Below, in pieces: positions 15,743 to 33,619 of a stretch of 64,000 nt of DNA. The position numbers were made by a program, and so were the translations under genes. Position 1 is the first letter of the stretch, and each line of letters opens with the position of its first letter. The notes under the pieces were generated by a model. That model had not been told where the DNA came from. It did no database searches and was given only the letters and a program-made list of their open reading frames with translations. The stretch spans positions 124,001 to 188,000 of IMG/VR virus record IMGVR_UViG_3300024252_000004; one strand, given 5' to 3'.

Positions 15743-16055
15743 CCTCTATTCTCCTAATAACCTTTTGAGCATCAACATATAATTCAGAATCCTCAGGATC
15801 CCTAATAGCTTTCAGATAAAAAATAACAATCTCTCCCTCAAACCCTTCAAAGGAAAACATGGGGGCGATGTATTTGTCGCGCTCCATATCCAGAATCGTG
15901 TGACACAATTCGTTAGGTAGATAAGTTACCTCCGTACTATCCCGACAAAAATGCATTGAACCAATGGCATCAGGATAATGATAGTAAAGAACTCCCCAAT
16001 AGGTGTCACCCTCCCATACGTCATGAGGCGGCGGCAAATCTAAAATCGAAATCAC
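15705..16055 (-). CDS. Hypothetical protein
   Basis: 116-aa ORF with a 4-bp stop/start overlap with the upstream gene. Confidence 0.65.
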   Translation of the reverse strand: MISILDLPPPHDVWEGDTYWGVLYYHYPDAIGSMHFCRDSTEVTYLPNELCHTILDMERDKYIAPMFSFEGFEGEIVIFYLKAIRDPEDSELYVDAQKVIRRIEDVKRASIAGCAG

Positions 16056-17074
16056 TCTACATCCTTTTTACCGGATTCTTTATTGTCACATATAGAACAT
16101 GAAGGCTCCGCAACTACCGACCCCATACTCAAAGTGCGAATCGGACTGTCAATAAGATCCATCAAAGAAGTCCCAACAGCACCGCTCGAAGATAAATAAG
16201 GATCATAACCCACAGAACCAACATACAAATCCCCACCGCTGCCGATGATATGGCTCTCATAACTTACCTCAACAGGAACAGAATTCCCAATTTCAGATAA
16301 CTTAATTGAATAGGCACTATCAGGAAAAGTCATGGTCGGAGGAGAATCATTTACCTCCACCCAATTAAAATAAAGCTGGTAAATACCCTCACGCAACTCA
16401 ACCTCACCAATATGGTTCAATCCCTCAGACATGCTATGACCCCAATAAGAACCCTTGTGAATCATGGTATAGGCAGAAGAATTAAGGAATGGAAGCCAAT
16501 CATTCTCGCGAAACTGATAAACGCTCTCAACACCAATGCTCGCACGATCCTCAGAATCAATGAAACAATCCGAACCTGCATCCCCCAAAGATAAGTCCTG
16601 AAGCCCAGGCATAAACTCCAACTTCCACTCAGCTATAACCTCAAATGCCCAATTCAAAGTGGCAACCATCTTCGAAGAACCACGACCAATAAAGTCCAAT
16701 GAAGAATCACGCATAGGATCAACATCAATGTTCTTAAATAGATACTCACCATCAACCTCAAAACAACGGAACTCATAAGCACCATCCAAACCACCACCCA
16801 AACCACCATGCTTCATAGAAAACAATGGAGATAAATACTTCTCAAATACCATAGAGTAAACCGATACATAAGAGGAAGGATATAACTCAACATCAGGACC
16901 AAAAGAAGCAACCGACTCAGGACCCAATGCCAAAGCATAAGGCTCATCAATAATCCCCGTACTAAACCACACAGGATATACTCCATTAAAAAGATCCCGA
17001 AAACATAAATCCACTCCCAACCACAAATCCAATTCCTCCAATAACATCATCAGCCCCTTATAAGTTTTTATCAA
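16052..17074 (-). CDS. Hypothetical acidic protein
   Basis: 340-aa ORF with strong G/T coding-strand bias. Confidence 0.7.
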   Translation of the reverse strand: MIKTYKGLMMLLEELDLWLGVDLCFRDLFNGVYPVWFSTGIIDEPYALALGPESVASFGPDVELYPSSYVSVYSMVFEKYLSPLFSMKHGGLGGGLDGAYEFRCFEVDGEYLFKNIDVDPMRDSSLDFIGRGSSKMVATLNWAFEVIAEWKLEFMPGLQDLSLGDAGSDCFIDSEDRASIGVESVYQFRENDWLPFLNSSAYTMIHKGSYWGHSMSEGLNHIGEVELREGIYQLYFNWVEVNDSPPTMTFPDSAYSIKLSEIGNSVPVEVSYESHIIGSGGDLYVGSVGYDPYLSSSGAVGTSLMDLIDSPIRTLSMGSVVAEPSCSICDNKESGKKDVE

Positions 17075-17611: not shown

Positions 17612-17850
17612 TGCAAGAACCGTGCCAACTCGGCCCCAGCAAGAATCGTGCCATATAAGTTGTAAAGACTTTGTCAAGACATGAAACGATCTTTACTTGT
17701 TAAGTTTATGTCAACACTTTATTAAAAGTAAAAGTGTTGGTACGGTTATTGCAAAGAAAGAAAAGGTGGCACAGGTTTTGCATACACTGCACGAACCATG
17801 CCAACGTGGCGCGAGCAGCGGCAGCCCAGAAACCTGGCATGGATCTTGCA
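17612..17850. promoter_or_regulatory. Cluster of six sigma54 (RpoN) -24/-12 consensus sites
   Basis: Minus strand: TGGCACGGTTCTTGCA 17612-17627, TGGCACGATTCTTGCT 17638-17653, TGGCATGGTTCGTGCA 17788-17803. Plus strand: TGGTACGGTTATTGCA 17738-17753, TGGCACAGGTTTTGCA 17767-17782, TGGCATGGATCTTGCA 17835-17850. Confidence 0.8.
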
Positions 17851-17931
17851 TGGGGTGCAAAACCTTTCTAAGTAACTGACAAGGTGTTATAGATGGGTGG
17901 AGCGAAAAACTACACACAACGGGCGGACAGC

Positions 17932-18708
17932 ATGGGTAAGGGTTCACGGGTCGAACTGACCAATATGGTGATCGACGCGGCACTCGCCGCGACTGGACAG
18001 AATGTCAGTTACTCGCGGGACGTGCCCAATGGGTTCGTCTCCGCTACTTTCCCCGACCGTATGGGTCGGGACGGGAACCTGAACCCGGTGGACGGCGGCG
18101 GTAAGCTGTTGATTACTCCGGCGAAAGAGTCGAAGGCCGGGCGCGGTCAGGTGTTCTTTGACGTTCACGGGATTTTCGATGGGCTGGAGATCGGGATTAG
18201 TCTGAAGGTGTCAGACTACATCGGCGACGATCACGCCCCGAGAAACTCCATCATCTCAGGTTCCAAGGCTGAGCACTACTTCGGGATGCATCTTGCGGCG
18301 CAGCGGGGGACGTTGCTCCCGGTGATCCAGTTCTGGCAGGACGCCAGCGGGCAGTGGTGGCGCTGCGCTTTTGACGCAGGCCGCATTCTGCGGGAGCGCC
18401 GCCCGAACCTGACGGTGGGGTGGGATAAGCTGCTCCACTCCGAGATCCCGAACATGGCCGCGTGCGGTCAGCTTGATCGCCTGGAGGCGATCACGGGCGA
18501 GCGTCCGCCCATCGTGGCGCTCGGCGAGGGCGGAGCGATCGCGATCTCGCCGCTCGTGCGGGGGCGCGGGAAATACTGCTACCTGTCGGCGAAGATCAGC
18601 CACGCCCGAACGGGTCACGGGTGGACGCCCGTGGACGCCCCTCGCCTGCCGGAGAGCTACGGCGAACTGTTGGAATGGACCGGAGAGCAGGGTGAGATGA
18701 TCGGCTGA
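17932..18708 (+). CDS. Putative PD-(D/E)xK restriction-endonuclease-like protein
   Basis: FFDVHG...GISLK resembles a D...SxK nuclease active site; the ATG at 17893 overlaps the -10, so ATG 17932 is preferred. Confidence 0.45.
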   Translation: MGKGSRVELTNMVIDAALAATGQNVSYSRDVPNGFVSATFPDRMGRDGNLNPVDGGGKLLITPAKESKAGRGQVFFDVHGIFDGLEIGISLKVSDYIGDDHAPRNSIISGSKAEHYFGMHLAAQRGTLLPVIQFWQDASGQWWRCAFDAGRILRERRPNLTVGWDKLLHSEIPNMAACGQLDRLEAITGERPPIVALGEGGAIAISPLVRGRGKYCYLSAKISHARTGHGWTPVDAPRLPESYGELLEWTGEQGEMIG

Positions 18709-18789
18709 GACAAAGGGGGCTCCGGCCCCCGAACCCCGCCCCGTACCGCTTCGGCGGACGGGGCATTAGGGGCAGGAAAGGAGACGCGC

Positions 18790-19212
18790 ATGGAGCCGCA
18801 CGAGATTGAGGATCTGATTGATATTCCGGCCGCAAAGGCTGAGATCATCCGGCGGCTGGACTGGCGGGGATGGCGACGGCGGCTCTTGATCAAGCGGATG
18901 AACGCTTGCACGACCGCCGATCAGCTTTCGCGGTTCAATTGGAACCGGCTGAACCCTAACCCGGATGATGAGGATCTGATTGGGTGGGTGCTTGATGCGG
19001 CCTTTGATGAGATCAAGCGTGCGAACACGCCTCCCGAGGATCTCACGCGCCGCGTGATTTGGTTCGCGGAAGATGGCAGGACGGTGGAGCGGGTTCGGGA
19101 CATCGATCCGGCTTCACTGTTCACCAAGTCGGGCCAGCCGAACGCACAGGCACGCGATCTGCTTCACGAGATTTTCGGAGCGAGGATCGTCAAGCTCCAG
19201 AGGATGGGTTGA
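18790..19212 (+). CDS. Hypothetical protein
   Basis: GGAG RBS, GC3-rich codons. Confidence 0.75.
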   Translation: MEPHEIEDLIDIPAAKAEIIRRLDWRGWRRRLLIKRMNACTTADQLSRFNWNRLNPNPDDEDLIGWVLDAAFDEIKRANTPPEDLTRRVIWFAEDGRTVERVRDIDPASLFTKSGQPNAQARDLLHEIFGARIVKLQRMG

Positions 19213-19442
19213 TGCGGCATGAAGGATGGATCCCCGTGGGGCAGTTGGTCATTGACCGGATGCCCCTGAACCCGGCTACGCTCTCGTGTGCGAACGCGAT
19301 TCTTGAAGGGGTCGAAATGCCTCCGATCAAGGTCCAGGCGTTGCCCGATGGCCGGTGGAAGGTTCGGGACGGTCGGCACCGTGCGGTCGCGCATAAGCTT
19401 ACGGGCAAGGCGCGAATCCTGGCTAAGTGGGGCACGCGATAG
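19212..19442 (+). CDS. Stand-alone ParB/Sulfiredoxin-like N-terminal domain protein
   Basis: MPPIKV....GRWKVRDGRHRAVAH motif; TGATG coupling to the upstream gene. Confidence 0.7.
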   Translation: MRHEGWIPVGQLVIDRMPLNPATLSCANAILEGVEMPPIKVQALPDGRWKVRDGRHRAVAHKLTGKARILAKWGTR

Positions 19443-19501
19443 TTTTCTCCCCGGCAGGTTGCCAGCCTGCCGGGGAGCGGGGAGAAAAACATTTCAAATG
19501 C

Positions 19502-19538
19502 TGGCACGGGTTTTGCAGAGAATGCAACAACTGTGCCA
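19502..19538. promoter_or_regulatory. Convergent twin sigma54 site palindrome
   Basis: TGGCACGGGTTTTGCA-gagaa-TGCAACAACTGTGCCA. Confidence 0.85.
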
Positions 19539-19639
19539 ACGTGTGAGCGTGTGCCTTTTTTCTCCCTGGGGCTGGGGTGAAAAAGAAAACAACTAAGTAA
19601 CTCACAGGATGTTATATCAAGACACCGGAGGTTCTTCCA

Positions 19640-19936
19640 ATGTTTCTGATCCAGATGCCCAGCGCCGCGCTTCCCGGGCGCATGTGCTACTACGATGGCC
19701 CGGCCGAGAACCCGCAGGTCGCGCCGGTGGAGCCCATGAGACGGGCAACCATGCGGGGGACGGGGTTCGATGATGTTTGGCTCGCGTTGGAGGTCCTTGA
19801 GGACTTTCAGTTCGACGCGAAGCACGCGCCGGCCACGCTGAACATGCTCGGAGGGTACGACTACACCGAGCGGCTCATGAAGGGCTGCATCGTGCTGGCC
19901 TCCGAGGTCGAAGGAGTCGAGGTGACCCAGGGCTGA
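19640..19936 (+). CDS. Hypothetical protein
   Basis: GGAGG RBS directly after a promoter copy. Confidence 0.8.
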   Translation: MFLIQMPSAALPGRMCYYDGPAENPQVAPVEPMRRATMRGTGFDDVWLALEVLEDFQFDAKHAPATLNMLGGYDYTERLMKGCIVLASEVEGVEVTQG

Positions 19937-19942
19937 GCCGGG

Positions 19943-20037
19943 CCCTTTCGGGCCCTCAAGAAAACACCGCTGACCGCCGCCTGTGTCGGCATTCGTTCCT
20001 CCAAGGTCAGCGGTGTTTTCTTGAGGGCCCGAAAGGG
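19943..20037. repeat. Perfect 33-bp inverted repeat with a 29-nt loop
   Basis: CCCTTTCGGGCCCTCAAGAAAACACCGCTGACC (19943-19975) is the exact reverse complement of 20005-20037. Confidence 0.95.
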
Positions 20038-20067
20038 GAGAAAAGATTTTCATTCTTGATAAGGAAC

Positions 20068-20104
20068 TGGCACGGACTTTGCAGTGTATGCAAGGGGCAT
20101 GCCA
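20068..20104. promoter_or_regulatory. Convergent twin sigma54 site palindrome
   Basis: TGGCACGGACTTTGCA-gtgta-TGCAAGGGGCATGCCA, enclosed by the 13-bp IR GGGAGAAAAGATT (20036-20048 / 20107-20119). Confidence 0.85.
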
Positions 20105-20172
20105 TCAATCTTTTCTCCCTGTTGTGAGGGGGTGAAAAGAAAGACACCTAAGTAACTCGTAAGATGTTATAG

Positions 20173-20550
20173 AGGGGTGCCGCGACGGCACTGAGCATGA
20201 CAGCGAGTCGGCGCCGACGACTTCGGCGAACCGACAACGACGAAACTAATAGCGAGAGGCTGAAGTTGACTCACAGACGTGTTCATCGCTGCCCACCGTC
20301 CGGGGCATAAACGGACGGCGGCGAGTAGTCGCTTGCGTGGATACCTTGGGGCCGGCAGTCCTGGGGCAAACTAAACGTAACGATGAAGCACCGGGTGTGA
20401 GGGAACGTGAAGACAGGACTCTGCCGGGTCTGGTCATGACACCTAAAACCCTCCTTTGTGACTCTGAGCATTAACCGGGCGACGGCTCGGTTCTGAGAAA
20501 GCAAAGAACGATTCCCCGTTGGGCAGCAAATGCTGTTGCCCAGCGGGACC
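20173..20550 (+). ncRNA. Putative ~380-nt structured non-coding RNA
   Basis: Follows the promoter copy at 20165; no plus-strand ORF; multiple stems (CCGTCCG/CGGACGG, CCGGCAGTCCTG/CAGGACTCTGCCGG, AACCGGGC/GCTCGGTT) and a 3' hairpin. Confidence 0.6.
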
Positions 20551-20584
20551 TCCGGGGAGAAAAACATTTCAAGCCTCGAAAGGT

Positions 20585-20621
20585 TGGCACGGTTATTGCA
20601 TACACTGCAAATGCCATGCCA
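20585..20621. promoter_or_regulatory. Convergent twin sigma54 site palindrome
   Basis: TGGCACGGTTATTGCA-tacac-TGCAAATGCCATGCCA. Confidence 0.85.
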
Positions 20622-20739
20622 GTTTATATGTTCTTTTTCTCCCCTGGCTGAGAATCTGGGGTGAAAAAGAAAACAACTAAGTAACTCACAGGGTGTTATA
20701 GAAGGACGTGAGAGAAACACCCAAACGGAGCATCCCACC

Positions 20740-21192
20740 ATGTCCGACAAGTTCACCCCCCTCTTCGCCGATGCCGCGCCCAAGCGGCAGACCTTCACCG
20801 AGAAGGTGATGAGCAAGGCGCCCGTGTCCTTCGGCACGGACGACCTCGGGAACCCGGTCGTCGGGGTCGGGATCCCCGGCTACGGTGGCTGCGGGGCGGG
20901 GGGGGCCATGCTGCTGCGGCCGGAGAACATGCAGAACTTCTGCACGGCCATCCGCAACGCCGTCGATGGTGTGGGTCCCGACCCGCTCCAGGTCGCCGTG
21001 GAGACTATGACTCGCACGGGAGAGGGGGAGATCAGCTTCAAGCTGAGCCACATGCCCCGGTCCCAGACGATCACGATGTCGTCCGCCGAGGCCATCGAGT
21101 TCGCAACGCTCGTGGAGCGGATGATCACCGCCTGCGAGAAGAAGGCGCAGGGTCCCGAGACGGACGGCGAGGAGGCGACCGACGGGGAGTGA
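20740..21192 (+). CDS. Hypothetical protein, possible PUR/PC4-like nucleic-acid-binding fold with acidic tail
   Basis: Two beta-rich+helix units and an E/D tail; architecture parallels 32276-32863. Confidence 0.6.
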   Translation: MSDKFTPLFADAAPKRQTFTEKVMSKAPVSFGTDDLGNPVVGVGIPGYGGCGAGGAMLLRPENMQNFCTAIRNAVDGVGPDPLQVAVETMTRTGEGEISFKLSHMPRSQTITMSSAEAIEFATLVERMITACEKKAQGPETDGEEATDGE

Positions 21193-21264
21193 TCTCCGCC
21201 CCGCCCCGGGAGGCTTCGGCCCCCGGGTTCCGGGGAGAAAAGATTTTCATTTTTGATAAGGAAC

Positions 21265-21300
21265 TGGCACAGATATTGCATGTATGCAAGAGTCATTCCA
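21265..21300. promoter_or_regulatory. Convergent twin sigma54 site palindrome (right half degenerate)
   Basis: TGGCACAGATATTGCA-tgta-TGCAAGAGTCATTCCA inside the 14-bp IR GGGGAGAAAAGATT (21232-21245 / 21303-21316). Confidence 0.75.
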
Positions 21301-21417
21301 TCAATCTTTTCTCCCCTGTGTGTGTATGGGGGTGAAAAAGAAAACAACTAAGTAACTTATAAGATGTTATAGAGAGGTGCCCGACAGACCGTGGCACCCA
21401 AACTCTGGAGAAATCGC

Positions 21418-21954
21418 ATGTCCTTCACGCCTCCGCACTCGCACTCCCGCTCCGTCGCTGGCCTCGGACGGCTTCTCGTCGCCGTCATGATCTCCGGCGA
21501 CAAGGCGCTCATCGCCCTCAAGTCGGCGGAGCAGGCTGTGGATGGGGCGCGGACGCGCCTGACCGTGTGGTTCCCCAACGATGAGCAGTGGCCGACCGAC
21601 GCCGAGGACAATCGCGAGGTGATCAGCGCCTTGTCCGTCGCCAACGGGGAGGTGAAGCACGCCCGGCTGATGCTGGACGGCGTCAAGGTCTCGCGGGCCG
21701 CCGGCCTCGACTTCCTGACGAGCCTGCACGAGGAGGTCGCGGCCTGCTCTGACCGCCTGTTCGTCAACCCCTACACCGGGAAGGGCGGAAAGACCTACAT
21801 GGCGTTCTTCGGCGAGGGCGACGACATCGAGCACCGGGGCCAGACCCACCGCGAGTTGCGGGACACCCTCCGCGCGAAGATCAAGAAGGCGGGCCTGGAT
21901 CCGGTGAAGGTCCAGGCGGACCACGGCTACGGCCGAGGGCGTGGCCGGCGCTGA
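21418..21954 (+). CDS. Hypothetical protein
   Basis: GGAG RBS before ATG 21418; strong GC3 codon bias. Confidence 0.8.
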   Translation: MSFTPPHSHSRSVAGLGRLLVAVMISGDKALIALKSAEQAVDGARTRLTVWFPNDEQWPTDAEDNREVISALSVANGEVKHARLMLDGVKVSRAAGLDFLTSLHEEVAACSDRLFVNPYTGKGGKTYMAFFGEGDDIEHRGQTHRELRDTLRAKIKKAGLDPVKVQADHGYGRGRGRR

Positions 21955-22127
21955 GCCGCACCCTGACGGGAGCTTCGGCTCCCCGAAGGGGGAGAAAAAC
22001 ATTGCAGAAGCATATGTGTATGCTTTTTCTCCCCTGTGCGTGTGTGTCGGGGTGAAAAGAAAAACAACTAAGTAACTCATAGGATGTTATTACAAGGTGT
22101 AAGGAACCCAAAAGCGGAGCATTGAAC

Positions 22128-22310
22128 ATGGACACGCCGACCATCATCATCGTGGATCTCTACGGGAAGGACGGGCGACCCGTCCGCACGGGAATCACGT
22201 TCCACAGCAACGACGAGGCGACCGCGAAGGAACAGGCTTCCGAGTTCGCGACACACCACAAGTCGCGGGGGAAGACCGTAAAGGCCCGGCGTCCGAAGAA
22301 GAAGCGTTGA
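22128..22310 (+). CDS. Small basic hypothetical protein
   Basis: GGAG RBS, KKKR C-terminus. Confidence 0.75.
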   Translation: MDTPTIIIVDLYGKDGRPVRTGITFHSNDEATAKEQASEFATHHKSRGKTVKARRPKKKR

Positions 22311-22315
22311 CGCAT

Positions 22316-22406
22316 GTGGGGCCGGGCAGGCGGACGCGGGTTCGATTCCCGCATCAGCCGGTCGCAAGCGATAGCTTGCCGGAGGGTTCGATTCCCTCCC
22401 CCCCAC
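22316..22406 (+). ncRNA. tRNA-like element with two T-arms
   Basis: GCGGG-TTCGATT-CCCGC (22336-22352) and GAGGG-TTCGATT-CCCTC (22382-22398); closing GTGGGG/CCCCAC; internal helix 22322-22331 / 22374-22382; no anticodon arm. Confidence 0.65.
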
Positions 22407-22531
22407 GGGGAGAAAAACATAACACCTTATCAAGATATGAGACTTTTCTCCCCTGCGTGTGCGTGTCGGGGTGAAAAACAATTCAACTAAGTAACTCATA
22501 GGATGTTATTCTAAAGTGTAGGAGGTTCCCG

Positions 22532-22834
22532 ATGCGAGTGCAGAACGACGACGGCATGTTCGAGTTTCAGACGGATTGCCGTCGCTGGCTGTGTATCCAG
22601 ACGACCCGGAAGGGACGGCGGGAGTTTGCTCCCCGTGTCCTCGTGCCGTATGCGTACGCCGGGAGTCTCTCTGCTCAGGCTCGCGCCGAGGGTGCGACCA
22701 GCGCGGACTTCGGAATCGTGGAGCCCAAGGTCAAGAAGCCGCGTGCGCCCAAGGCTCCGCGCAAGCCTCGTCAGCCTCGCAAGGTGAAGGCTCGGATGCC
22801 GGAGGGTTTCGTGCCCCTGGATCTGGGGCTCTGA
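22532..22834 (+). CDS. Hypothetical protein with Lys/Pro/Arg-rich (histone H1-like) tail
   Basis: GGAGG RBS; KVKKPRAPKAPRKPRQPRKVK. Confidence 0.75.
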   Translation: MRVQNDDGMFEFQTDCRRWLCIQTTRKGRREFAPRVLVPYAYAGSLSAQARAEGATSADFGIVEPKVKKPRAPKAPRKPRQPRKVKARMPEGFVPLDLGL

Positions 22835-22906
22835 ACGGCAAAAGGTCCCGATCACCAAGTGATCGGGACCTCCGGGGAGAAAACTTTTGCGTTTATCTTG
22901 ATGAGG

Positions 22907-22943
22907 TGGTATGAATCTTGCAGAGAATGCAAGGGTTGTGCCA
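22907..22943. promoter_or_regulatory. Convergent twin sigma54 site palindrome
   Basis: TGGTATGAATCTTGCA-gagaa-TGCAAGGGTTGTGCCA. Confidence 0.8.
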
Positions 22944-23020
22944 CCCAGGGGAGAAAAGATTCATATGTATATGCTGGGGTGAAAACCTTAGCACACAGGA
23001 AACTGGTAGGGTGTTATAGA

Positions 23021-23710
23021 AGGGTGCCGGAAAGACCCGGCAAACAGATGGATAAGGAGAATCGATAGAGTCTGCGAGAAGTGCGTGTCTCTCTTCTAAA
23101 CGCAACGCTTTGTAGCTCGTAATACCTCAGTCACCACGCAGGCGAATGCGTACCGGTGGTGACAGTTTGCCAGTCCGACGTGAAGAACAGCAGTGGTGGA
23201 TACCGGGAAGGGAAGCGGCAGCACCGTGAATAGCCGACCCGGAAACGCGAAATCGATAGTACAGACTCCCAGTAACGTGATACGCGCCCTTCGGGGAAAG
23301 CTTAACCAGTCTGTCTCGTAAGTGCATGATACCAAAGTGCAGTCCTTTAAGGGATGTAGCAGGCAACCGGAGCCGAGAACACCGAAAGGCAAATCCGGGA
23401 CTGAGGAAATGAGGTCGAAAAAGGATCGAAAGTCTGCGATCACCACCGCCATGGCGGGGTCAATCCAGGCGACGGAATCTAAGCTACTCGGTTAAGCAAC
23501 CTGAGACTAAAGACTTCCGGCGGGACTCTGCCGACATAGATAACTATAGAGGATGGACACGGAAAAGATGGGCTGCCCGGTGCAGACCAAGATGTCCATA
23601 ACATTTGCGCGAAGAGGTAGCTCCTACGAAGGCAAATCCTGTAAAGTTACCGCCCCCCACTCACGCGCCTTTGGCCGGTCATGAGTGGGGGGCGGCTCCT
23701 TTTGTTTTCC
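23021..23710 (+). ncRNA. Putative ~690-nt large structured non-coding RNA
   Basis: Runs from the promoter copy (23012) to a terminator (23650-23710); no credible ORF; long-range helices CCTCAGTC 23125 / GACTGAGG 23399 and GTAGCT 23112 / AGCTAC 23482; UUCG/GAAA tetraloops. Confidence 0.7.
23650..23710 (+). terminator. Intrinsic terminator
   Basis: 14-bp stem CCGCCCCCCACTCA / TGAGTGGGGGGCGG followed by CTCCTTTTGTTTT. Confidence 0.75.
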
Positions 23711-23822
23711 CCGTATGTCAAGCTTTTCTCCCCTGCGTGTGCGTGTCGGGGTGAAAAACAATTCAACTAAGTAACTCATAGGGTGTTATATCAAAGTATA
23801 ACAAAACCAAAGAGCAATCAAG

Positions 23823-24452
23823 ATGACTATCGCCGGTGATAGCCGCGACACGCGGAACCCTCAGAAGTCCTGGGTCGCTTGGACGGCGTCTCTCTGGGCT
23901 CAGAAGATCCTGCGGGCCGAAGTAAATCGTCCCGAGGTAGTGTCTCTCACGGGGGACTATGTCCAGGCGCACATGGAGGAGCTTTTGCCCTTCCATCGTC
24001 GGCATTTCTTCGAGATGGATCCTGTCCAGCTTCGCAAGATGCGGCGGAAGTTCAAGCGGCTCCCTCGCACGTTCACACGGGACGAGATCAGCGACACGAC
24101 CATCCATCAGGGGAACATCTTCAAGACCGACGTAGTTTCGGATGCCGATGGGGCGTATTACGACTGGGACATCACCGGCTCGATTCGTGAGGCCATCAAG
24201 TATGGTCTTGAAGATGCTGTGTGGGACGCTTTTGAGTCTCCGGGGACTCGGTGCATGGCTCTGACGGTTTCCCGTCGGATGCCGGGTGGCAAAGCGAAAA
24301 CGTCGGAGCTTTGGCGGGAGATCGTCAATGGGATCGGCGGAGTGTTCGGAGACTCTCGTGTGTGGGAGTTCGAAGAGCCGATCCACTACGGCCGGGCACG
24401 CCTTGGCTGCGGCAACATGATGCTCATCCGTGCGGTCATCCGCGAGCGGTGA
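23823..24452 (+). CDS. Hypothetical protein (possible class I methyltransferase-like fold)
   Basis: VVSLTG..., FFEMD, IHQGNIF and YYDWD fall at strand ends as in a Rossmann fold; weak call. Confidence 0.55.
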   Translation: MTIAGDSRDTRNPQKSWVAWTASLWAQKILRAEVNRPEVVSLTGDYVQAHMEELLPFHRRHFFEMDPVQLRKMRRKFKRLPRTFTRDEISDTTIHQGNIFKTDVVSDADGAYYDWDITGSIREAIKYGLEDAVWDAFESPGTRCMALTVSRRMPGGKAKTSELWREIVNGIGGVFGDSRVWEFEEPIHYGRARLGCGNMMLIRAVIRER

Positions 24453-24482
24453 AAAGAGCAATAGAAGATGTAAGGGGGCAAA

Positions 24483-24608
24483 GTGGAAATCGTCATCGTC
24501 TGGTACTCTGCGAACGAACGCGAAGACACTCCCGTGGAGGGGTTCTACCGATGGGATGATTCCCATTGTGGCGACAGCCTTTCCTTCGTCGGGACGGAGC
24601 TTCCATGA
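24483..24608 (+). CDS. Small hypothetical protein (41 aa, not in ORF track)
   Basis: AAGGGGG RBS, GTG start, ATGA overlap with the next gene. Confidence 0.55.
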   Translation: MEIVIVWYSANEREDTPVEGFYRWDDSHCGDSLSFVGTELP

Positions 24609-24919
24609 AAAGTCACGAAAAGTCTGATAGCAAACGCTGGGTGATTCAGCGCTGCGTTCGCTGCGGGCATTGGTGGGACCCGCATGGAATCTGGACAACC
24701 GACTGTCCGGCTCCGACCGAAGCTGCGCAGAGTCTGATGGCAGATCTGCGTGTGCTTGGCATCCGAAGCTCCGCCAAGCAGAATGTGGTGTTCGCATGGC
24801 GTACGAGGCGGGTGAATCCGTGGAATCGTAGGGAGTTCGATGCTCGGCACCAAACGGCCGAGGAAATCGAGAAAGAACTGCGAACCCATCCCACACGTCA
24901 GTCCCTTTACCGGGGCTGA
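24605..24919 (+). CDS. Hypothetical protein with CxxC
   Basis: RCVRCGH motif; translationally coupled start. Confidence 0.65.
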   Translation: MKSHEKSDSKRWVIQRCVRCGHWWDPHGIWTTDCPAPTEAAQSLMADLRVLGIRSSAKQNVVFAWRTRRVNPWNRREFDARHQTAEEIEKELRTHPTRQSLYRG

Positions 24920-25047
24920 GGTCGGGGAGAAAAGATTGTTATTCTTGTGAAGGTATTCTCCCCGATGCCTAAGCCGGGGTGAAAAACAATTCAACTAAGT
25001 AACTCACAAGATGTTATATCAAAGCGTAACAAAGGGATGAAGAAAGA

Positions 25048-25389
25048 ATGGGAACGGACCTGAACAAACTCCTTTCGGAGTGTGACGTTGAAACCTACGC
25101 TGCTTCGCGCGGTTCGGGTGGACAGAACGTCAACAAACGGGATACGGCGGTGCGTCTGACGCATCGTCCCACCGGAATCAAAGCCGGTTCCCGTTCCCAT
25201 TCCACGCAGGGACGGAATAAGAGCGAAGCGCTCAAACGTCTGGCAAAGAAGATCGCTCAGGCAAACGAGGTCAAGGCGGAGCGGTTGCCCACGGGAATCC
25301 CGCAGTCCGTCAAGGAAAAACGATTGTCTGATAAGCGTCGGACTTCTGCACGAAAGACCGGACGGAAGCCCGTCCGATCGGAGGACTGA
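25048..25389 (+). CDS. ArfB/PrfH-like GGQ peptidyl-tRNA hydrolase (stalled-ribosome rescue)
   Basis: SRGSGGQNVNKRDTAVRLTH.PTGI...Q.RNK..AL..L plus basic tail KRL.DKRR.S.RK..R. Confidence 0.88.
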   Translation: MGTDLNKLLSECDVETYAASRGSGGQNVNKRDTAVRLTHRPTGIKAGSRSHSTQGRNKSEALKRLAKKIAQANEVKAERLPTGIPQSVKEKRLSDKRRTSARKTGRKPVRSED

Positions 25390-25391
25390 TC

Positions 25392-25601
25392 ATGGGCAAG
25401 AAAGAACCCCTGATTGAGACGGCGGAATGCTGGTGCGGTAAAACTGTAACGTGTTCGTCAGAGGATTTCGGAAAGCCTGACGTGGTAGTCCCCGGATGGG
25501 TTTCTTGGAAGCCTATCAAGAAAGAATGTTCGTGCGGAGAGTCTCTGATCTTCGGAATGGACTTCGACAAGTTTCTGAACCTCTTTGAGGTGGAGTACTG
25601 A
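25392..25601 (+). CDS. Small Cys-rich (zinc-finger-like) protein
   Basis: ECWCG...ECSCG; GAGGA RBS. Confidence 0.7.
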   Translation: MGKKEPLIETAECWCGKTVTCSSEDFGKPDVVVPGWVSWKPIKKECSCGESLIFGMDFDKFLNLFEVEY

Positions 25602-25787
25602 ATGGTGTTCTACTACCTGATGTCTCGCGGCATCTTCGCTGGCCTGATGGCCTATGGCTACGCCCACTACGAGAGCGAGATCTGGATCTGGGCAGGACTC
25701 GTCGCGCTGGTGCCTTTCTTGGGCGAAATCGTGATGATCGGGTTCCTCGTTTTCACGATGTTCTTTCTGTTGGGGTCTTTCGCATGA
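25602..25787 (+). CDS. Small membrane protein
   Basis: Two hydrophobic segments; GGAG RBS. Confidence 0.7.
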   Translation: MVFYYLMSRGIFAGLMAYGYAHYESEIWIWAGLVALVPFLGEIVMIGFLVFTMFFLLGSFA

Positions 25788-26170
25788 AGTACGGACTTTC
25801 TCTCTCTTTCTGTGTGCGTGCGATCATTGATCGCGAGATCACTCTCTTCGAGATCGCTGGCATCATCTCTGCGACAAAGATGGAGTCGCCGGAGGAAGCG
25901 TACGAGCAGTACGGAAAGAGCTACTGGTCTGAGGCGTCAGAAGATGATGTGATGGTGGTCCTTCGGGAACTCTGGCCCCGAGTGATTCAGCCACGCATGT
26001 ACGGTCTTCCGCACCACAATATCTCCAAGGGAATCTGGTTGGAGGTTGCGCATGACCGGCTCCCGGTGCTCATCGAGGCGCGGCACTGTGCCTACTGGAT
26101 GGAGGGAACTGGTAACGAGCCCGCCATCGGTATGATTCGAAACGGTGGACTCTGGAAGTTTCTGGCCTGA
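25784..26170 (+). CDS. Hypothetical protein
   Basis: ATGA coupling, 128 aa. Confidence 0.75.
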   Translation: MKYGLSLSFCVRAIIDREITLFEIAGIISATKMESPEEAYEQYGKSYWSEASEDDVMVVLRELWPRVIQPRMYGLPHHNISKGIWLEVAHDRLPVLIEARHCAYWMEGTGNEPAIGMIRNGGLWKFLA

Positions 26171-26327
26171 GCCTACGCCGAGCCTCCAATCAAGGAGGCT
26201 CGGTCGGGGAGAAAAGATAATCATTCTTGTGAAGGTATTCTCCCCGAAGCACAGATAGGGGGTGAAAAACAATTCAACTAAGTAACTCATAAGATGTTAT
26301 AGAGAGGCACAGAATCGGGAGCAGAGA

Positions 26328-26843
26328 ATGGATATTCTTTCGAAAGTCGGCATGGTGGTTGGGGTGACTGCGCTTTGCGCTTCGCTCTACTCTGCTTACT
26401 CTCACTTCTACGATGGGAAAACCGTCCCCGAGAAGCTCCCGATGGTGGGGCAGGCTTGGTGGGTGGAAGGAAAGGGGACCGTTCTGGTCGCAGAAGTCTA
26501 CCCTGCGGAAGATCGGATCGTCTACAAGACCAAGAACCACAAGGGTGGATGGTCGGACGATCTGACTACTGAGTCTACTCTCGGGCAGTTCATGAACTAC
26601 TCTCGGGTCAACAAGAAGATGACGACTCACGAGTCCGCTCCTGAGAAGAAGGATCGGCGTCCGATGGTGGGTCAGATCTGGGAAGTCGCCGGCTTCGGTG
26701 ATGTGCGAGTCCTTTACTGCGACGGCTACTCCGTTAGCTACAGCTACAAACTGGATCCGTGGAGAAATGAGTCGAGTGAGACTACGGATCTCGAACTGTT
26801 CTACCACTACGGAAACGTCAAGAAAGAGAAGGAGGCCAAGTGA
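26328..26843 (+). CDS. Membrane-anchored protein with two internal repeats
   Basis: N-terminal hydrophobic helix; PMVGQAWWVEGKGTV / PMVGQIWEVAGFGDV repeat. Confidence 0.8.
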   Translation: MDILSKVGMVVGVTALCASLYSAYSHFYDGKTVPEKLPMVGQAWWVEGKGTVLVAEVYPAEDRIVYKTKNHKGGWSDDLTTESTLGQFMNYSRVNKKMTTHESAPEKKDRRPMVGQIWEVAGFGDVRVLYCDGYSVSYSYKLDPWRNESSETTDLELFYHYGNVKKEKEAK

Positions 26844-27169
26844 GTCTACCGAAGCTTCGCATTGGCAACATCGTCCACTGGAATGGCAATCCTTGGGGCG
26901 GAAAGGTTATCTCGAATGGATACGATCTGAATGGAGGGCTCGGGTTCTACTGTATCATCAAGGCTCCCCTTCAGCCCGTGCGCAGGGGTGGGCGTCCGCT
27001 CTGGCTGATCTTCGAAGACGGAACGGTGAGCCCTTCGCTGGGGGATTCCGAGCCTCTCATGTCCCTGCGTGTGAACGGTATCCCTTACCCTCTCGTCATC
27101 GAGGGAGAACTGGAGACGTACACGTTCGAAGGCGAGGGTGAACTCAAGTTCCTTCTGGAAACCCTGTAA
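26840..27169 (+). CDS. Hypothetical protein
   Basis: GGAGG RBS, GTGA coupling. Confidence 0.75.
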   Translation: MSLPKLRIGNIVHWNGNPWGGKVISNGYDLNGGLGFYCIIKAPLQPVRRGGRPLWLIFEDGTVSPSLGDSEPLMSLRVNGIPYPLVIEGELETYTFEGEGELKFLLETL

Positions 27170-27193
27170 ACTTCTCAAACCCGCGAGTAACTG

Positions 27194-27370
27194 ATGCTTA
27201 GGCTTCTTTGGGCCCTTGTCAAATGGGGCATCTTCAGTTGGATGATCGATGTCAGAGCTTTCGGCTGGCACATTTTCCCCAGGGAATGGTGTGCTTGGGC
27301 TGAATGCACTTCGAAAGAGTGTTTGGCTCTGGATGACTTCGATGCAGCTATCTTTCGGCTCAAGGGCTGA
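27194..27370 (+). CDS. Small hypothetical protein (58 aa, not in ORF track)
   Basis: MLRLLWALVKWG...RLKG, ends at the cassette boundary. Confidence 0.5.
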   Translation: MLRLLWALVKWGIFSWMIDVRAFGWHIFPREWCAWAECTSKECLALDDFDAAIFRLKG

Positions 27371-27459
27371 AGGACGGGGAGAAAAGATTGGAGGGTGAAA
27401 AAGAAAACACACAGGAAACTTATAAGATGTTATATGAGGTTGTATTCTCCGGAGACAAT

Positions 27460-27771
27460 GTGATTCCCAACAGCAACATCCCGTCCTACGCAATCCCCTT
27501 CCACATCGGCGTCTGCGGTCTGATCATCGCCTGGGCCCTCGGCGTTGAGGCTGCCAAGTTCATCACGGAGGCCGTGATCACGCTGATCGGTGCGCCGATC
27601 CACTTCGCCCTGTGGACTTTCGATGCTGCGATCGACGCGGTCTACCTGAACGGCTACGAGTACGACCATCCGGTCGATGTCAATGAGCGTGCTGCGTTCG
27701 CTGTCGCGTCCGGTCACAGTGGGTTCGCCCACCGGCCGAGTTCTCATATCAGCGGATGGCGAGGCTACTGA
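27460..27771 (+). CDS. Membrane protein
   Basis: GTG after GGAG, downstream of a promoter copy; hydrophobic helices. Confidence 0.7.
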   Translation: MIPNSNIPSYAIPFHIGVCGLIIAWALGVEAAKFITEAVITLIGAPIHFALWTFDAAIDAVYLNGYEYDHPVDVNERAAFAVASGHSGFAHRPSSHISGWRGY

Positions 27772-27902
27772 GCCTCTCCCGCTCCGGCTGCGGCCGGAGA
27801 TTGGGGAGAAAAGATAAGCATCCTTGTCAAGGAGTGAAAACCTTAACCCCCAAGAAACTCATAAGATGTTATAGAATGACACCAAAAGATATCGAGGAAA
27901 CC

Positions 27903-28346
27903 ATGAAGTCTCTGCTCAACAGTCTGAACAAGTCTCTCCCTTCGATCATGGGATCGAAGAACCAGACGATGATCGATGCTGCTGTGCTGCTCAAGGCATC
28001 GATCACCGATCAGATCAACGGCGGTGGCCCGAAGGGCTGGGTCTGGCAGGAGACCGTGAGCGACAGCTTCGTCGCCCTCGATCTTCACCATCCTCAGCGC
28101 GGAAAGATCCGGGTCTTCTCGGCTTCGGAAGCGTGCTGGGACTGGCGACAGTATCTCGGTCGCGGCTACAACATGGGCACCGTTAAGCTGCCAAATGGCG
28201 GGAACGAGCCTGTCGGACAGTACCGGAATTTCAAGACGGGATTTCGGAACATCGTTCAGATCGCGAAGATCCGGTGGGGATCCATCACGGTCGCGGACGA
28301 GAAGCGGAAGGTCAACGACCTCAAGGGGAAATTCCATTGGGGCTGA
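27903..28346 (+). CDS. Hypothetical protein
   Basis: GAGG RBS before ATG 27903 (alternative ATG 27876). Confidence 0.75.
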   Translation: MKSLLNSLNKSLPSIMGSKNQTMIDAAVLLKASITDQINGGGPKGWVWQETVSDSFVALDLHHPQRGKIRVFSASEACWDWRQYLGRGYNMGTVKLPNGGNEPVGQYRNFKTGFRNIVQIAKIRWGSITVADEKRKVNDLKGKFHWG

Positions 28347-28561
28347 ACGAACCGAAGTTCAAGACCTACGACGAGCGGAACCGTGCAGGCTGCTGTGCGC
28401 GGGGAAGCTGCGAAGAAAAGCTGTGTCCTGATGACACATGGATCAACAGCCTGAACAACAACAAGTACTGCGGTCCCTGCAAGGACTTCTTTTACTTTAG
28501 GCATGACCGATTCGCGACCGGAAAGATCCAGAGAAAGTGGACCCTCATGCCTTCGGGCTGA
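28337..28561 (+). CDS. Small Cys-rich hypothetical protein
   Basis: CC..C...C...C..C pattern; start uncertain (TTG). Confidence 0.5.
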   Translation: MGLNEPKFKTYDERNRAGCCARGSCEEKLCPDDTWINSLNNNKYCGPCKDFFYFRHDRFATGKIQRKWTLMPSG

Positions 28562-28609
28562 GGGGATTCACCCTGTCGGGGAGAAAAGATATACATTCTT
28601 GATAAGGAT

Positions 28610-28646
28610 TGGTACGGTTCTTGCACACACTGCAAGACCTATGCCA
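28610..28646. promoter_or_regulatory. Convergent twin sigma54 site palindrome
   Basis: TGGTACGGTTCTTGCA-cacac-TGCAAGACCTATGCCA. Confidence 0.8.
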
Positions 28647-28749
28647 TATAGCCTTTTGCCTATGCCCACCGGGGAGAAAAACTATTCATGTAAGTAACTC
28701 ATAGGGTGTTATATCAGGCCGTGAGAGCAACCTACCCGGAGAGTGCAGC

Positions 28750-29073
28750 ATGGCCCGACCGACCTACTTCCTGATCGATGACGATTCGCTGGAGACCTAC
28801 ACGACCCTGGACGCGGAGGATCTCGACAACTGGGCTGTTCTGGTGAACGGTGCCATCGTCTCCATCGAGGCGGACGAGGAGGACTGTGAGATCCGCATCG
28901 CTGAGATCAATCGGGAGGGTGACAACCTGACCAACGATCTGGGCTTCGGTGCCGAAACGCAGTGCGACGACGGCGACGACGCCGACGACGACCAGGGCGG
29001 AGTCTGGGGCGACTTCGACAACACGGTCGGTGCGGGCGAGTGGGCCGACAAGGCCGTCCAGAAGTCCTGGTGA
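28750..29073 (+). CDS. Very acidic hypothetical protein (possible DNA mimic)
   Basis: D/E-dominated 107 aa; GGAG RBS. Confidence 0.75.
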   Translation: MARPTYFLIDDDSLETYTTLDAEDLDNWAVLVNGAIVSIEADEEDCEIRIAEINREGDNLTNDLGFGAETQCDDGDDADDDQGGVWGDFDNTVGAGEWADKAVQKSW

Positions 29074-29363
29074 GTCGCCGTCTCGCAATCGTCCTCGATC
29101 CCGACAATAGCGATCCGGCCTGGGGTGCGGCTGAGGAGGCCGCCTTCCGGCGGTTCACCGACGAAAGCCACTACCCGGAGTCAGCCGAGGGCAATCCTGT
29201 TCCGGTTCTGGAAGGGGAGAGGATCCCGATCTACGATCTGATCGAGGCCGCCCGAGCCCTGGTGGACTGTGCCGATCACACCGGCTGTACCCCTGACCTC
29301 GCAGTTGTGGATTCCGATCCACTTTTCAAGCTCAAGCGTGTCCTCGACAGCATCGGAGAATGA
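29070..29363 (+). CDS. Hypothetical protein
   Basis: GTGA coupling; GC3-rich frame. Confidence 0.7.
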   Translation: MSRRLAIVLDPDNSDPAWGAAEEAAFRRFTDESHYPESAEGNPVPVLEGERIPIYDLIEAARALVDCADHTGCTPDLAVVDSDPLFKLKRVLDSIGE

Positions 29364-29890: not shown

Positions 29891-30145
29891 AGCCCCTGAA
29901 AGAAGAGGATGCCCAAGCCATTCTCGCTGCGGCTTACAAGGCTGCGGCGGAAAAAAAAGAACACATGGCCCGTTATCCTCGATGTCTGCAAGGAGCGGGA
30001 AATCGAGTTCGGTTGGGCTTCCATGTTCTCCCTGATGACCGATTTCTTCTACGAAGATGTGCGTGAATGGAGTGAAGGAAACTACGGAAAGGACGCCATC
30101 TATTTCTACGCTCTGATTCCAGAAGACGAAAGCCATTCGGGGTAA
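29887..30145 (+). pseudogene. Frameshifted hypothetical gene (+1 shift at an A8 run)
   Basis: MKPLKEEDAQAILAAAYKAAAEK joins KNTWPVILDVCKEREIEFGW... if one A of 29951-29958 is removed. Confidence 0.65.
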
Positions 30146-33616: not shown

Positions 33617-33619
33617 GAA

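What the first reader, a model, noticed from the sequence alone, without database searches (positions are those of the whole stretch)
20173..20550. About 380-nt protein-free cassette with multi-stem structure
Seen: it starts immediately after a promoter copy preceded by a twin sigma54 element and ends in a long hairpin plus box, exactly like the protein cassettes. There is no plus-strand ORF. Stems include CCGGCAGTCCTG/CAGGACTCTGCCGG, CCGTCCG/CGGACGG and AACCGGGC/GCTCGGTT. Inference: a second independent ncRNA gene.
Basis: partly seen in the sequence, partly recalled or inferred. Interest (0 to 1): 0.62.

Follow-up and report, generated by a model that had tools for sequence, protein, structure and literature searches.

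The report
Structured noncoding RNA gene in jumbo phage
A roughly 380-base, protein-free transcription unit in a 395-kb marine jumbo phage makes a folded RNA that matches no catalogued RNA family, keeps its stems through compensating mutations in a distant relative, and turns up in seawater RNA libraries where the neighbouring protein genes do not.

Summary
Window 20173-20550 lies between a phage promoter copy (20148-20172) and a 14-bp hairpin plus GGGGAGAAAA box (20514-20563). It belongs to a GC-rich array of about 20 promoter/terminator cassettes in a 395-kb marine phage.

- **Not coding:** no frame has a coding signature, and no peptide is conserved.
- **No family match:** Rfam and ARAGORN find nothing.
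- **One diverged homologue:** a 406-kb ENA phage contig (L006; flanking proteins 41-67% identical) carries it at the same position in the array.
- **Covariation:** on gapless alignments, three hairpins keep 95% of pair cells paired, against 25-60% when partners are slid. Ten pairs changed on both sides.
two are conserved. Only 6 bp of the long stem are conserved, and these are the apical loops of two covarying hairpins, so it is probably a kissing contact.
- **Expression:** in two seawater metatranscriptomes, contigs over 5.9 kb fall only on this cassette and on a second ORF-less cassette (23019-23720).

Fold energy alone is unremarkable. Only two lineages exist, and strand and ends are inferred. 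Function is unknown. My best guess is a stable protein-binding RNA. The conserved downstream protein models weakly as a PUR/Whirly-like nucleic-acid binder.

The parts
20068..20104 (.). Palindromic twin TGGCAC-N5-TTGCA element (sigma54-promoter-like on both strands), upstream of the unit
   Evidence: 16 matches in the window against 0.08 expected, all in the island. The element is also present upstream of the homologue in L006 and in L020. Its function was not tested.
20111..20138 (+). Inverted repeat TTTTCTCCC / GGGGGTGAAAA just upstream of the promoter (box pair)
   Evidence: this recurs in front of most cassette promoters.
20148..20172 (+). Copy of the array promoter motif (CTAAGTAACTCGTAAGATGTTATAG)
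   Evidence: a looser form of the motif matches 24 times in the window, all on the + strand. In protein cassettes it sits roughly 20-60 nt before a Shine-Dalgarno sequence and start codon. Twelve copies lie on the array strand of L006. Promoter activity is inferred.
20173..20270 (+). Variable 5' domain of the RNA (local hairpins, poorly conserved in L006)
   Evidence: A 3-nt deletion at 20215 in DNA run X20 shortens a hairpin loop and leaves the stem intact (plus direct reading of the sequence).
20271..20510 (+). Conserved core of the RNA (about 240 nt)
   Evidence: conserved blocks alternate with covarying stems when compared with L006 6455-6801 (minus strand).
20284..20385 (+). H0, tentative long-range helix (20284-20288 with 20381-20385) that encloses H1 and H5
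   Evidence: 5 pairs, 4 changed on both sides and still paired. I chose the register of the 3' strand after seeing the data, so this helix is tentative.
20290..20323 (+).
   Evidence: 11 pairs, 100% paired in both lineages, 2 changed on both sides and 3 on one side.
20343..20367 (+). H5 hairpin with invariant CGGCAG in a 7-nt loop (20352-20358)
   Evidence: 9 positions, 3 changed on both sides, 89% paired. Pair probability in each sequence's own ensemble is 0.74-0.99.
20399..20403 (+). Invariant GAGGG (inside GUGAGGGAA), a possible pseudoknot partner of CCCUC
   Evidence: invariant and complementary in both lineages. There is no covariation, and this is not significant on its own.
20412..20435 (+). 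H2' hairpin, 10 positions, with invariant UGCC loop (20422-20425)
   Evidence: the block is only 44% identical, yet 95% of cells are paired and 5 pairs changed on both sides. Slid controls give 25-60% paired.
20352..20427 (+). Its conserved part is CGGCAG (20353-20358) pairing with CUGCCG (20421-20426), which joins the H5 loop to the H2' loop
   Evidence: these 6 bp are invariant in both lineages. By direct reading, only 2 of the 5 inner UCCUG/CAGGA pairs can form in L006.
20449..20453 (+). Invariant CCCUC (inside AACCCUCC, which resembles an anti-Shine-Dalgarno sequence)
20454..20506 (+).
   Evidence: H4 is invariant. H3 forms 8 bp here and 7 bp in L006, with one single-side change. The spacers differ in length on both sides.
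20514..20547 (+). Terminal hairpin (14-nt arms), not followed by a U-run
   Evidence: L006 has a different hairpin at the same place. A role in termination or processing is inferred.
20554..20563 (+). GGGGAGAAAA box that closes each cassette
   Evidence: The box is also present in L006, L018 and L020.
20195..20478 (.). Stretch covered by a 284-nt contig of metatranscriptome run X23
   Evidence: 99+% identical, depth 6.9. No RNA-run contig lies on any protein cassette between 18000 and 23900.
20740..21192 (+). Downstream 150-aa protein, in conserved synteny; a possible PUR/Whirly-like nucleic-acid binder
   Evidence: It is 44% identical to the protein downstream of the L006 homologue. The AF2 model has pLDDT 60.5. 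The top Foldseek and VIA matches are PUR-alpha (Z 6.0-6.7), Whirly and MRP1/2. This is a weak lead.

Best explanation
Window 20173-20550 is an independent gene for a stable, structured non-coding RNA of about 340-380 nt in a marine jumbo phage.

Shown:
- The cassette has no coding signal and no conserved peptide.
- A positional homologue exists in a distant relative.
- Three hairpins (H1, H5, H2') are maintained by compensatory changes.
- Loop and linker motifs are invariant.
- The sequence is present in RNA libraries in which the flanking protein cassettes are absent.

Inferred:
- Transcription starts just after the promoter copy at 20148-20172 and ends at the hairpin plus GGGGAGAAAA box.
- The + strand is the RNA strand. 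This rests on the orientation of promoter and terminator, and on several G-U pairs that would be A-C on the other strand.
- The about 240-nt core folds into a junction (H0 enclosing H1 and H5), followed by H2' and H3/H4. It is compacted by a 6-bp loop-loop contact (CGGCAG with CUGCCG) and perhaps by a GAGGG/CCCUC pseudoknot.

Function is a guess, at about 0.3. I think the RNA acts in trans as a protein-binding scaffold or decoy during infection. The conserved downstream PUR/Whirly-like protein is one candidate partner. An action on translation is an alternative, suggested by the Shine-Dalgarno-like and anti-Shine-Dalgarno-like motifs and by the ArfB-like and tRNA cassettes nearby.
For: - Architecture.
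- Non-coding: one search shows flat GC1/2/3, with stops in every + frame. One search finds no conserved peptide in six-frame comparison with L006.
- Homologue and synteny.
- Covariation on gapless MAFFT blocks: one search covers H1 and H5 (20 pairs, 95% paired, 5 changed on both sides; slid controls 35-48% paired with 0-1 double change). One search covers H2' (10 pairs, 95% paired, 5 changed on both sides; slid controls 25-60%). One search covers all helices: 24 of 26 changed pairs are kept, with 14 double changes, against at most 9 of 16 when slid.
- Thermodynamics in this phage: the comparative model lies within 2.4 kcal/mol of the MFE, and its helices have pair probabilities of 0.63-0.99, apart from the outer 4 bp of H1 at 0.06.
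- Expression: all 5 contigs of two metatranscriptome runs that map within 18000-23900 fall inside the two ORF-less cassettes, which make up about 18% of that stretch.
- Single copy in the genome.
Against: - Only two diverged lineages exist, so the covariation statistics rest on one pairwise comparison. All other copies are 100% identical.
- The fold-energy z-score without the terminator (-2.0) is no better than that of neighbouring coding windows.
- In L006 the thermodynamic ensemble disfavours H1, H3 and H4. The comparative model lies 18 kcal/mol above the L006 MFE.
- The RNA evidence comes from assembled contigs. These give no strand, ends or quantity. Only one of the two RNA runs covers this cassette.
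- No family, ligand, target or partner has been demonstrated.
- The PUR-like assignment of the neighbouring protein rests on a model with pLDDT 60 and on Z scores below 8.
- The whole array is syntenic between the two lineages, so adjacency is weak evidence for a partnership.
Confidence: 0.78

Rival explanations
1. The cassette is a small-protein gene: one of the short + strand ORFs (37 aa at 20197-20310, 31 aa, 45 aa) or the 63-aa minus-strand ORF is the real product.
For: These short ORFs exist. The ATG at 20197 lies at a distance from the promoter similar to that in protein cassettes. The strain variant at 20215 is a 3-nt deletion, which is in frame.
Against: No Shine-Dalgarno sequence sits at a usable distance from the ATG. 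GC3 is not elevated in any frame, unlike in most neighbouring genes. No ORF or peptide is conserved in L006; the only matches are 12 residues or fewer, lie on the conserved RNA blocks, and fall in different frames. G-U pairs and compensatory changes mark RNA-level selection on the + strand.
Confidence: 0.04
2. The RNA is a cis-acting leader (riboswitch, attenuator or processing module) that controls read-through into the conserved downstream 150-aa gene. It is not a free-standing RNA.
For: The RNA and the 150-aa gene are adjacent in both lineages. The terminal hairpin lacks a U-run, so read-through is conceivable. Two mutually exclusive pairings exist in this phage, the long stem against H5 plus H2'.
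Against: In both lineages the downstream gene has its own full box, palindrome and promoter set after the hairpin. The RNA contig stops before the hairpin, and nothing covers the downstream gene. The whole array is syntenic, so adjacency is not specific to this pair. No riboswitch family matches.
Confidence: 0.08
3. The stretch is a decayed or empty cassette (a spacer or dead gene) that is transcribed only because it keeps a promoter. The stems are those expected by chance in 59% GC sequence.
For: The fold-energy z-score is ordinary for this island. Rfam finds nothing. No function is known.
Against: The cassette is retained at the same array position in a lineage whose flanking proteins are only 41-67% identical. 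It shows invariant loops and 10 or more compensatory double changes. It is over-represented in RNA libraries relative to its neighbours.
Confidence: 0.05
4. The functional product is read from the minus strand, for example as an antisense RNA or from the convergent sigma54-like site.
For: Contigs cannot give the strand. Sigma54-like sites face both ways, and the minus-facing site at 20606-20621 points into the cassette.
Against: The helices contain many G-U pairs, for example four in H5 here, which would be A-C mismatches on the minus strand. Folding is weaker on the minus strand, with z -2.1 against -3.9. All array promoters and genes are on the + strand.
Confidence: 0.03

Closest known systems
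GOLLD and ROOL large non-coding RNAs of phages and prophages (Rfam families; comparison from my own knowledge)
   Same: They are phage-borne, protein-free, highly structured RNAs of unknown function. They are expressed as their own units and often lie near tRNA genes. This array also carries a tRNA-Arg and tRNA-like hairpins.
   Different: No sequence or structure match appears even at E up to 10. This RNA is shorter (a core of about 240 nt against 500-800 nt) and shares no motif that I could recognise.
T4 stable RNAs species 1 and 2 (rnaC, rnaD), and phage-encoded tRNA or tmRNA genes (from my own knowledge)
   Same: They are abundant stable small RNAs encoded by a large lytic phage, next to translation-related genes. 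The function of the T4 species is still unclear.
   Different: ARAGORN finds no tRNA or tmRNA features here. This RNA is larger than the T4 species, has its own promoter and terminator, and shows no sign of being processed from a tRNA cluster.
Kissing-loop RNAs such as TAR/TAR* and ColE1 RNA I/II (from my own knowledge)
   Same: Two hairpin loops are perfectly complementary over 6 nt and are invariant, while their stems covary.
   Different: Here the contact would be within one molecule, and it is only inferred. In this phage the same strands can also form a 12-bp alternative helix.
6S RNA and other protein-sequestering RNAs (from my own knowledge)
   Same: They are abundant, stable, trans-acting structured RNAs. 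This is the functional class I favour.
   Different: There is no rod-like 6S architecture, no Rfam match, and no evidence of RNA polymerase binding.

Membership tests
Any Rfam 15 family (4227 models, including GOLLD, ROOL, 6S, RNase P, tmRNA, SRP, riboswitches and ribozymes) | A covariance-model score at or above the family's gathering threshold | tested here: not met
   One search scanned the whole window at gathering thresholds and found only tRNA at 35306. One search scanned 20100-20620 at E up to 10 and found only HDV_ribozyme on the minus strand over the terminator (17.6 bits against 50 needed). One search scanned the L006 homologue region and found nothing on it.
tRNA / tmRNA | A cloverleaf or tRNA-like domain with a tag reading frame | tested here: not met
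   ARAGORN finds only tRNA-Arg(UCU) at 35306-35382.
Protein-coding cassette of this array | A Shine-Dalgarno sequence and start codon roughly 20-60 nt after the promoter, GC3 well above GC2, and an ORF conserved in the relative | tested here: not met
Structured ncRNA (generic) | Helices maintained by compensatory substitutions across homologues | tested here: met
   there are 10 double changes on gapless blocks and 14 over all helices, and the slid controls collapse. The limitation is that only two lineages are compared.
Structured ncRNA (generic) | Folding energy beyond that of shuffled sequence and of the local background | tested here: inconclusive
   With the terminator, z is -3.9. Without it, z is -2.0, within the range of neighbouring coding windows.
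Expressed RNA gene | A discrete transcript with defined strand and ends | tested here: inconclusive
   an RNA-library contig covers 20195-20478 and nothing covers the neighbouring genes. Contigs give no strand, ends or level.
Sigma54-dependent promoter (the upstream twin element) | GG at -24 and GC at -12 in TGGCAC-N5-TTGCA, plus an enhancer-binding activator | tested here: inconclusive
   The consensus match is far above chance. No Sigma54_activat domain is encoded by the phage. The host is unknown. A palindromic operator or an RNA hairpin explains the element equally well.
PUR/Whirly-like single-stranded nucleic-acid binders (the downstream 150-aa protein) | Two beta-beta-beta(-beta)-alpha repeats forming the PUR/Whirly fold | tested here: inconclusive
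   The model has pLDDT 60.5 and a secondary-structure order that fits. The best Foldseek E-value is 1e-3 with TM about 0.4. VIA gives Z 6.0-6.7 to PUR-alpha over about 106 residues, and all top 15 matches are PUR, Whirly or MRP. No sequence-level match was found.

The most novel reading that the evidence does not exclude
This RNA may be one of a set of unrelated, abundant structured RNAs that these jumbo phages make from dedicated promoter/terminator cassettes. Other candidates are the 700-nt RNA at 23019-23720, the ORF-less kilobase around tRNA-Arg, and a different ORF-less cassette in a third lineage. Under this reading the RNAs act on the host translation apparatus. This RNA's invariant Shine-Dalgarno-like GAGGG and anti-Shine-Dalgarno-like CCCUCC segments would engage ribosomes or mRNAs. 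It would work alongside the ArfB-like release-factor protein and the tRNA-like elements of the same island, or as an RNP with the PUR/Whirly-like neighbour.
Probability: 0.12. Interest if true: 0.85.

Novelty: new member of a known kind. Interest (0 to 1): 0.56.

Why it matters
Large structured RNAs of phages are few, and their functions are mostly unsolved. This one matches no catalogued family. It comes with a defined promoter and end, a homologue that already reveals three covarying hairpins and a candidate kissing contact, and signs of high abundance in the ocean.

Together with the second RNA cassette, it suggests that the GC-rich cassette array of these uncultured 400-kb phages delivers RNAs as well as proteins. 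The array is probably an early or host-takeover region. The RNA is short enough to synthesise, probe and use in pull-down experiments. That makes its function testable even without a cultured host.

Tried and rejected
- **Rfam:** scans at gathering and at permissive thresholds on this phage and on the homologue found nothing real. The HDV-ribozyme match is a minus-strand match to the terminator, far below threshold.
- **ARAGORN:** no tRNA or tmRNA here.
- **Paralogy with the other ORF-less cassette:** the local alignment score is 28, against 27.4 +/- 3.7 for shuffles. The shared 9- to 11-mers are not conserved in L006.
- **Recoding or alternative genetic code:** rejected. Each + frame carries stops, and between them all three stop codons occur.
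- **INPHARED phages, distant blastn:** no match.
- **IMG/VR scans:** scans with the promoter, promoter plus box, two motifs from this RNA, one block from the second RNA, and two neighbouring proteins returned only a 100% identical 236-kb twin contig.
- **JGI metagenome scan:** only this phage.
- **GTDB genome scans:** 0 hits with one pattern. The other gave 2 hits, about the number expected by chance, with no further similarity.
- **Third-lineage fragments:** L018, L020 and L023 were reached through the conserved 271-aa protein. They have the same boxes but no homologue by covariance model or nhmmer.
- **Covariance-model search of the L006 and L009 source records:** those records are not held, so this could not be run.
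- **Search for a T7-like RNA polymerase (PF00940):** uninformative, because the control genomes did not respond either.
- **Structure of the 271-aa first-cassette protein:** only weak PD-(D/E)xK-nuclease-like matches.

Full report
**Setting.** The window is bases 124001-188000 of a single 395,127-bp IMG/VR virus record with 43.8% GC. DNA runs that hold it are seawater or marine metagenomes. Its genes include topoisomerase IA, a UvrD-like helicase, a radical-SAM enzyme, an adenylosuccinate-synthetase homologue and an RNA ligase. Window 17.9-35 kb is an island of 52-64% GC built from about 20 cassettes. Each cassette has:
- a hairpin followed by a GGGGAGAAAA box;
- in some cases, a palindromic pair of TGGCAC-N5-TTGCA elements;
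- an inverted repeat TTTTCTCCCC/GGGGTGAAAA;
- a promoter-like motif of about 25 nt, CTAAGTAACTCATAGGATGTTATAG;
- a payload, always on the + strand.

The stricter form of the promoter motif occurs 23 times in the genome, all on the + strand, 18 of them in the island. Nearly all payload proteins have no Pfam or PHROG match. The exception is an RF-1-domain (ArfB-like) protein.

**The observation.** Of the + strand ORFs of 30 codons or more, those inside the unit have 37, 31 and 45 codons. GC at the three codon positions is flat (0.54-0.64) in all six frames, while the neighbouring genes show GC3 of 0.57-0.93 against GC2 near 0.45. All three + frames carry stops, and between them all three stop codons occur. 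The first ATG has no Shine-Dalgarno sequence at a usable distance, unlike the protein cassettes. The three stems exist.

Energy alone does not make them special. With the terminator, z is -3.9 on the + strand and -2.1 on the minus strand. Without it, z is -2.0, inside the range of -2.6 to +0.85 for twelve coding windows of the island.

**Known families.** Rfam 15 gives nothing at gathering thresholds. At E up to 10 it gives only a sub-threshold HDV-ribozyme match, on the minus strand over the terminator. ARAGORN finds only tRNA-Arg at 35306. The sequence is single-copy in the genome. It is unrelated to the other ORF-less cassette at 23019-23720.

**Expression.** Twenty of the 24 listed runs hold at least half of the sampled words of window 18000-23900. 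Two are seawater metatranscriptomes. When these were laid on 18000-23900, they contributed five contigs, all at least 99% identical:
- 20195-20478 (run X23), inside this cassette;
- 23038-23270 and 23322-23594 (X23);
- 23056-23272 and 23310-23614 (X24).

Every one lies inside one of the two ORF-less cassettes, which make up about 18% of the stretch. None lies on a protein cassette. Contaminating DNA would cover the stretch evenly, so the pattern argues for transcripts much more abundant or more stable than the neighbouring mRNAs. Contigs give no strand, ends or level, and only one run covers this cassette.

**Homologues.** IMG/VR, the JGI metagenomes and other assemblies hold only copies that are 100% identical over the RNA. 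A profile-free search with the 340-aa protein that flanks the island (16052-17074, minus strand) found a 41%-identical relative. That relative lies on a 405,912-bp ENA contig, held here as L006. Its array is syntenic with this one: seven proteins are 42-67% identical, it uses the same promoter motif (12 copies), the same boxes and the same twin palindrome, and its GC is raised to 49-59% over a backbone of 39-43%.

At the position of the finding, L006 has an ORF-less unit of about 345 nt (about 6801-6455, minus strand) between a promoter copy and a hairpin plus box. It is followed by a protein 44% identical to the 150-aa protein at 20740-21192. Its 5' third differs, but the core aligns as invariant blocks separated by diverged stretches. 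No peptide is conserved in any frame.

A third group of lineages was reached through the 271-aa first-cassette protein (45-65% identical). These share the boxes but, in the fragments available, have no homologue by covariance model or nhmmer. One of them carries a different ORF-less cassette. Pattern scans of 185,579 prokaryote genomes gave only chance-level hits.

**Structure.** MAFFT aligns two blocks without gaps, anchored by invariant loops:
- window 20289-20367 with L006 6630-6708;
- window 20408-20439 with L006 6563-6594.

On the first block, H1 (11 bp, loop GGGCWUAAA) and H5 (9 positions, 7-nt loop ending CGGCAG) are 95% paired. Five pairs changed on both sides. Sliding the 3' partner by 1-3 columns gives 35-48% paired and 0-1 such pairs. 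On the second block, hairpin H2' (10 positions, loop UGCC) is 95% paired, with five double changes, although the block is only 44% identical. Slid controls give 25-60%. Over all proposed helices, 24 of 26 changed pairs stay paired, 14 of them through double changes. If a changed pair has a 0.4 chance of pairing, 18 or more kept out of 19 (my hand count for H1, H5 and H2') has probability about 8e-7. This figure is optimistic, because I chose the helices after seeing the data.

The stem AACCGGGC/GCTCGGTT (H3) is conserved with one single-side change, and sits inside an invariant CUUUG/CAAAG helix (H4).

These six bases are the apical loop of H5, and the loop plus closing pair of H2'. By direct reading, just 2 of the 5 inner pairs can form in L006. 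Two covarying hairpins whose invariant loops are perfectly complementary over 6 nt point to a loop-loop contact. In this phage, a competing 12-bp helix is the alternative.

Two further features are weaker:
- GAGGG (20399-20403) and CCCUC (20449-20453) are invariant and complementary. This may be a pseudoknot but is not significant by itself.
- H0 (20284-20288 with 20381-20385) shows four double changes, but I chose its register after seeing the data.

In this phage the comparative model lies 2.4 kcal/mol above the MFE, and its helices are probable in the ensemble apart from the outer 4 bp of H1 (0.06). In L006 it lies 18 kcal/mol above the MFE, and H1, H3 and H4 are not favoured. That is a real weakness of a two-sequence model. 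Several G-U pairs fix the + strand as the RNA strand. The only strain variant seen is a 3-nt deletion at 20215. It shortens a loop in the variable 5' domain and keeps its stem.

**Function.** Nothing demonstrates a function. The cassette has its own promoter and end, and so does the next gene, in both lineages. A trans-acting RNA is therefore more likely than a leader.

The downstream 150-aa protein is conserved next to the RNA. Its AF2 model is poor (pLDDT 60.5), but its order of strands and helices fits two PUR-type repeats. Its best structural matches all belong to one superfamily of single-stranded nucleic-acid binders: PUR-alpha repeats I-II (Foldseek E 1e-3; VIA Z 6.0-6.7 over about 106 residues), then Whirly proteins and the trypanosome guide-RNA-binding MRP1/2. 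Because the whole array is syntenic, this is a lead and not evidence of partnership.

The Shine-Dalgarno-like and anti-Shine-Dalgarno-like motifs, the ArfB-like cassette, tRNA-Arg and the tRNA-like hairpins suggest a translation theme. That remains speculation.

The phage encodes a sigma70-family factor and no sigma54 activator domain. Which polymerase reads the promoter motif, and what the twin palindrome does, both remain open.

**Verdict.** This is an independent gene for a structured non-coding RNA that matches no catalogued family. It is known from two lineages of uncultured marine jumbo phages. Its function is unknown.

Noticed in passing
window 23019-23720: This is a second ORF-less cassette of about 700 nt. 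Contigs from both metatranscriptome runs cover it. Its homologue in L006 (about 3265-3811, minus strand) shares long invariant blocks, and 19 of 123 RNAalifold pairs changed on both sides. No Rfam family matches. It is unrelated in sequence to the finding.
   Followed up: partly
window 35040-36000: tRNA-Arg(UCU) at 35306-35382 sits inside about 1 kb with no ORF of 90 codons or more, some 290 nt downstream of a promoter copy. This may be a longer non-coding transcript that carries the tRNA.
   Followed up: no
window 22320-22405: Two hairpins with tRNA T-arm sequence (GGTTCGATTCC), the second followed by a C-rich tail, lie after the 62-aa ORF of cassette 22074-22493. ARAGORN and Rfam do not call them tRNAs.
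   Followed up: no
window 17612-31957 (16 sites): TGGYAY-N5-TTGCA (the sigma54 -24/-12 consensus) occurs 16 times against 0.08 expected. Most sites are in face-to-face palindromic pairs between a box and a promoter. The element is conserved in L006 and L020. The phage encodes no sigma54-activator domain, so it could equally be an operator or an RNA hairpin.
   Followed up: partly
window 17900-35000; L006 1-9200: The cassette array is a GC-rich island (52-64% here, 49-59% in L006) in phages of 41-44% GC, with GC3 up to 0.93 in its genes. The cause is unknown.
   Followed up: partly
window 25048-25389: A 113-aa RF-1-domain (ArfB-like peptidyl-tRNA hydrolase) protein has its own cassette. It is 66% identical to its L006 counterpart.
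   Followed up: partly
window 17893-18708: The first-cassette 271-aa protein is the most conserved protein of the array: 9 clusters at 45-100% identity, all from metagenomes. Its AF2 model is good (pLDDT 84.5). The only matches are weak ones to PD-(D/E)xK nucleases such as DpnI, RecU and Hjc (E 0.04-0.3).
   Followed up: partly
L020 1680-1960: A third lineage (Logan contig; its 271-aa homologue is 65% identical) has the same boxes and twin palindrome. After a GATGTTAT-type promoter it carries a different ORF-less cassette of about 280 nt, closed by a long-range 15-bp stem.
   Followed up: no
window 57513-58802: An adenylosuccinate-synthetase homologue (Pfam E 6e-43) is encoded in the phage. 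In some phages, PurA homologues (PurZ) make 2-aminoadenine DNA. I did not examine this.
   Followed up: no
window 30305-30598: This is a small hydrophobic protein whose C-terminus is a run of about nine lysines, encoded by AAG repeats at 30569-30595.
   Followed up: no
window 20215: DNA run X20 carries a 3-nt deletion within the CGACGAC repeat of a 5'-domain hairpin loop. All other assemblies are identical over the RNA.
   Followed up: partly
G000 361386-361553 (outside the window): A sigma70-family factor (Sigma70_r2, 29.6 bits) lies in a 255-aa ORF. It is a candidate reader of the array promoter.
   Followed up: no
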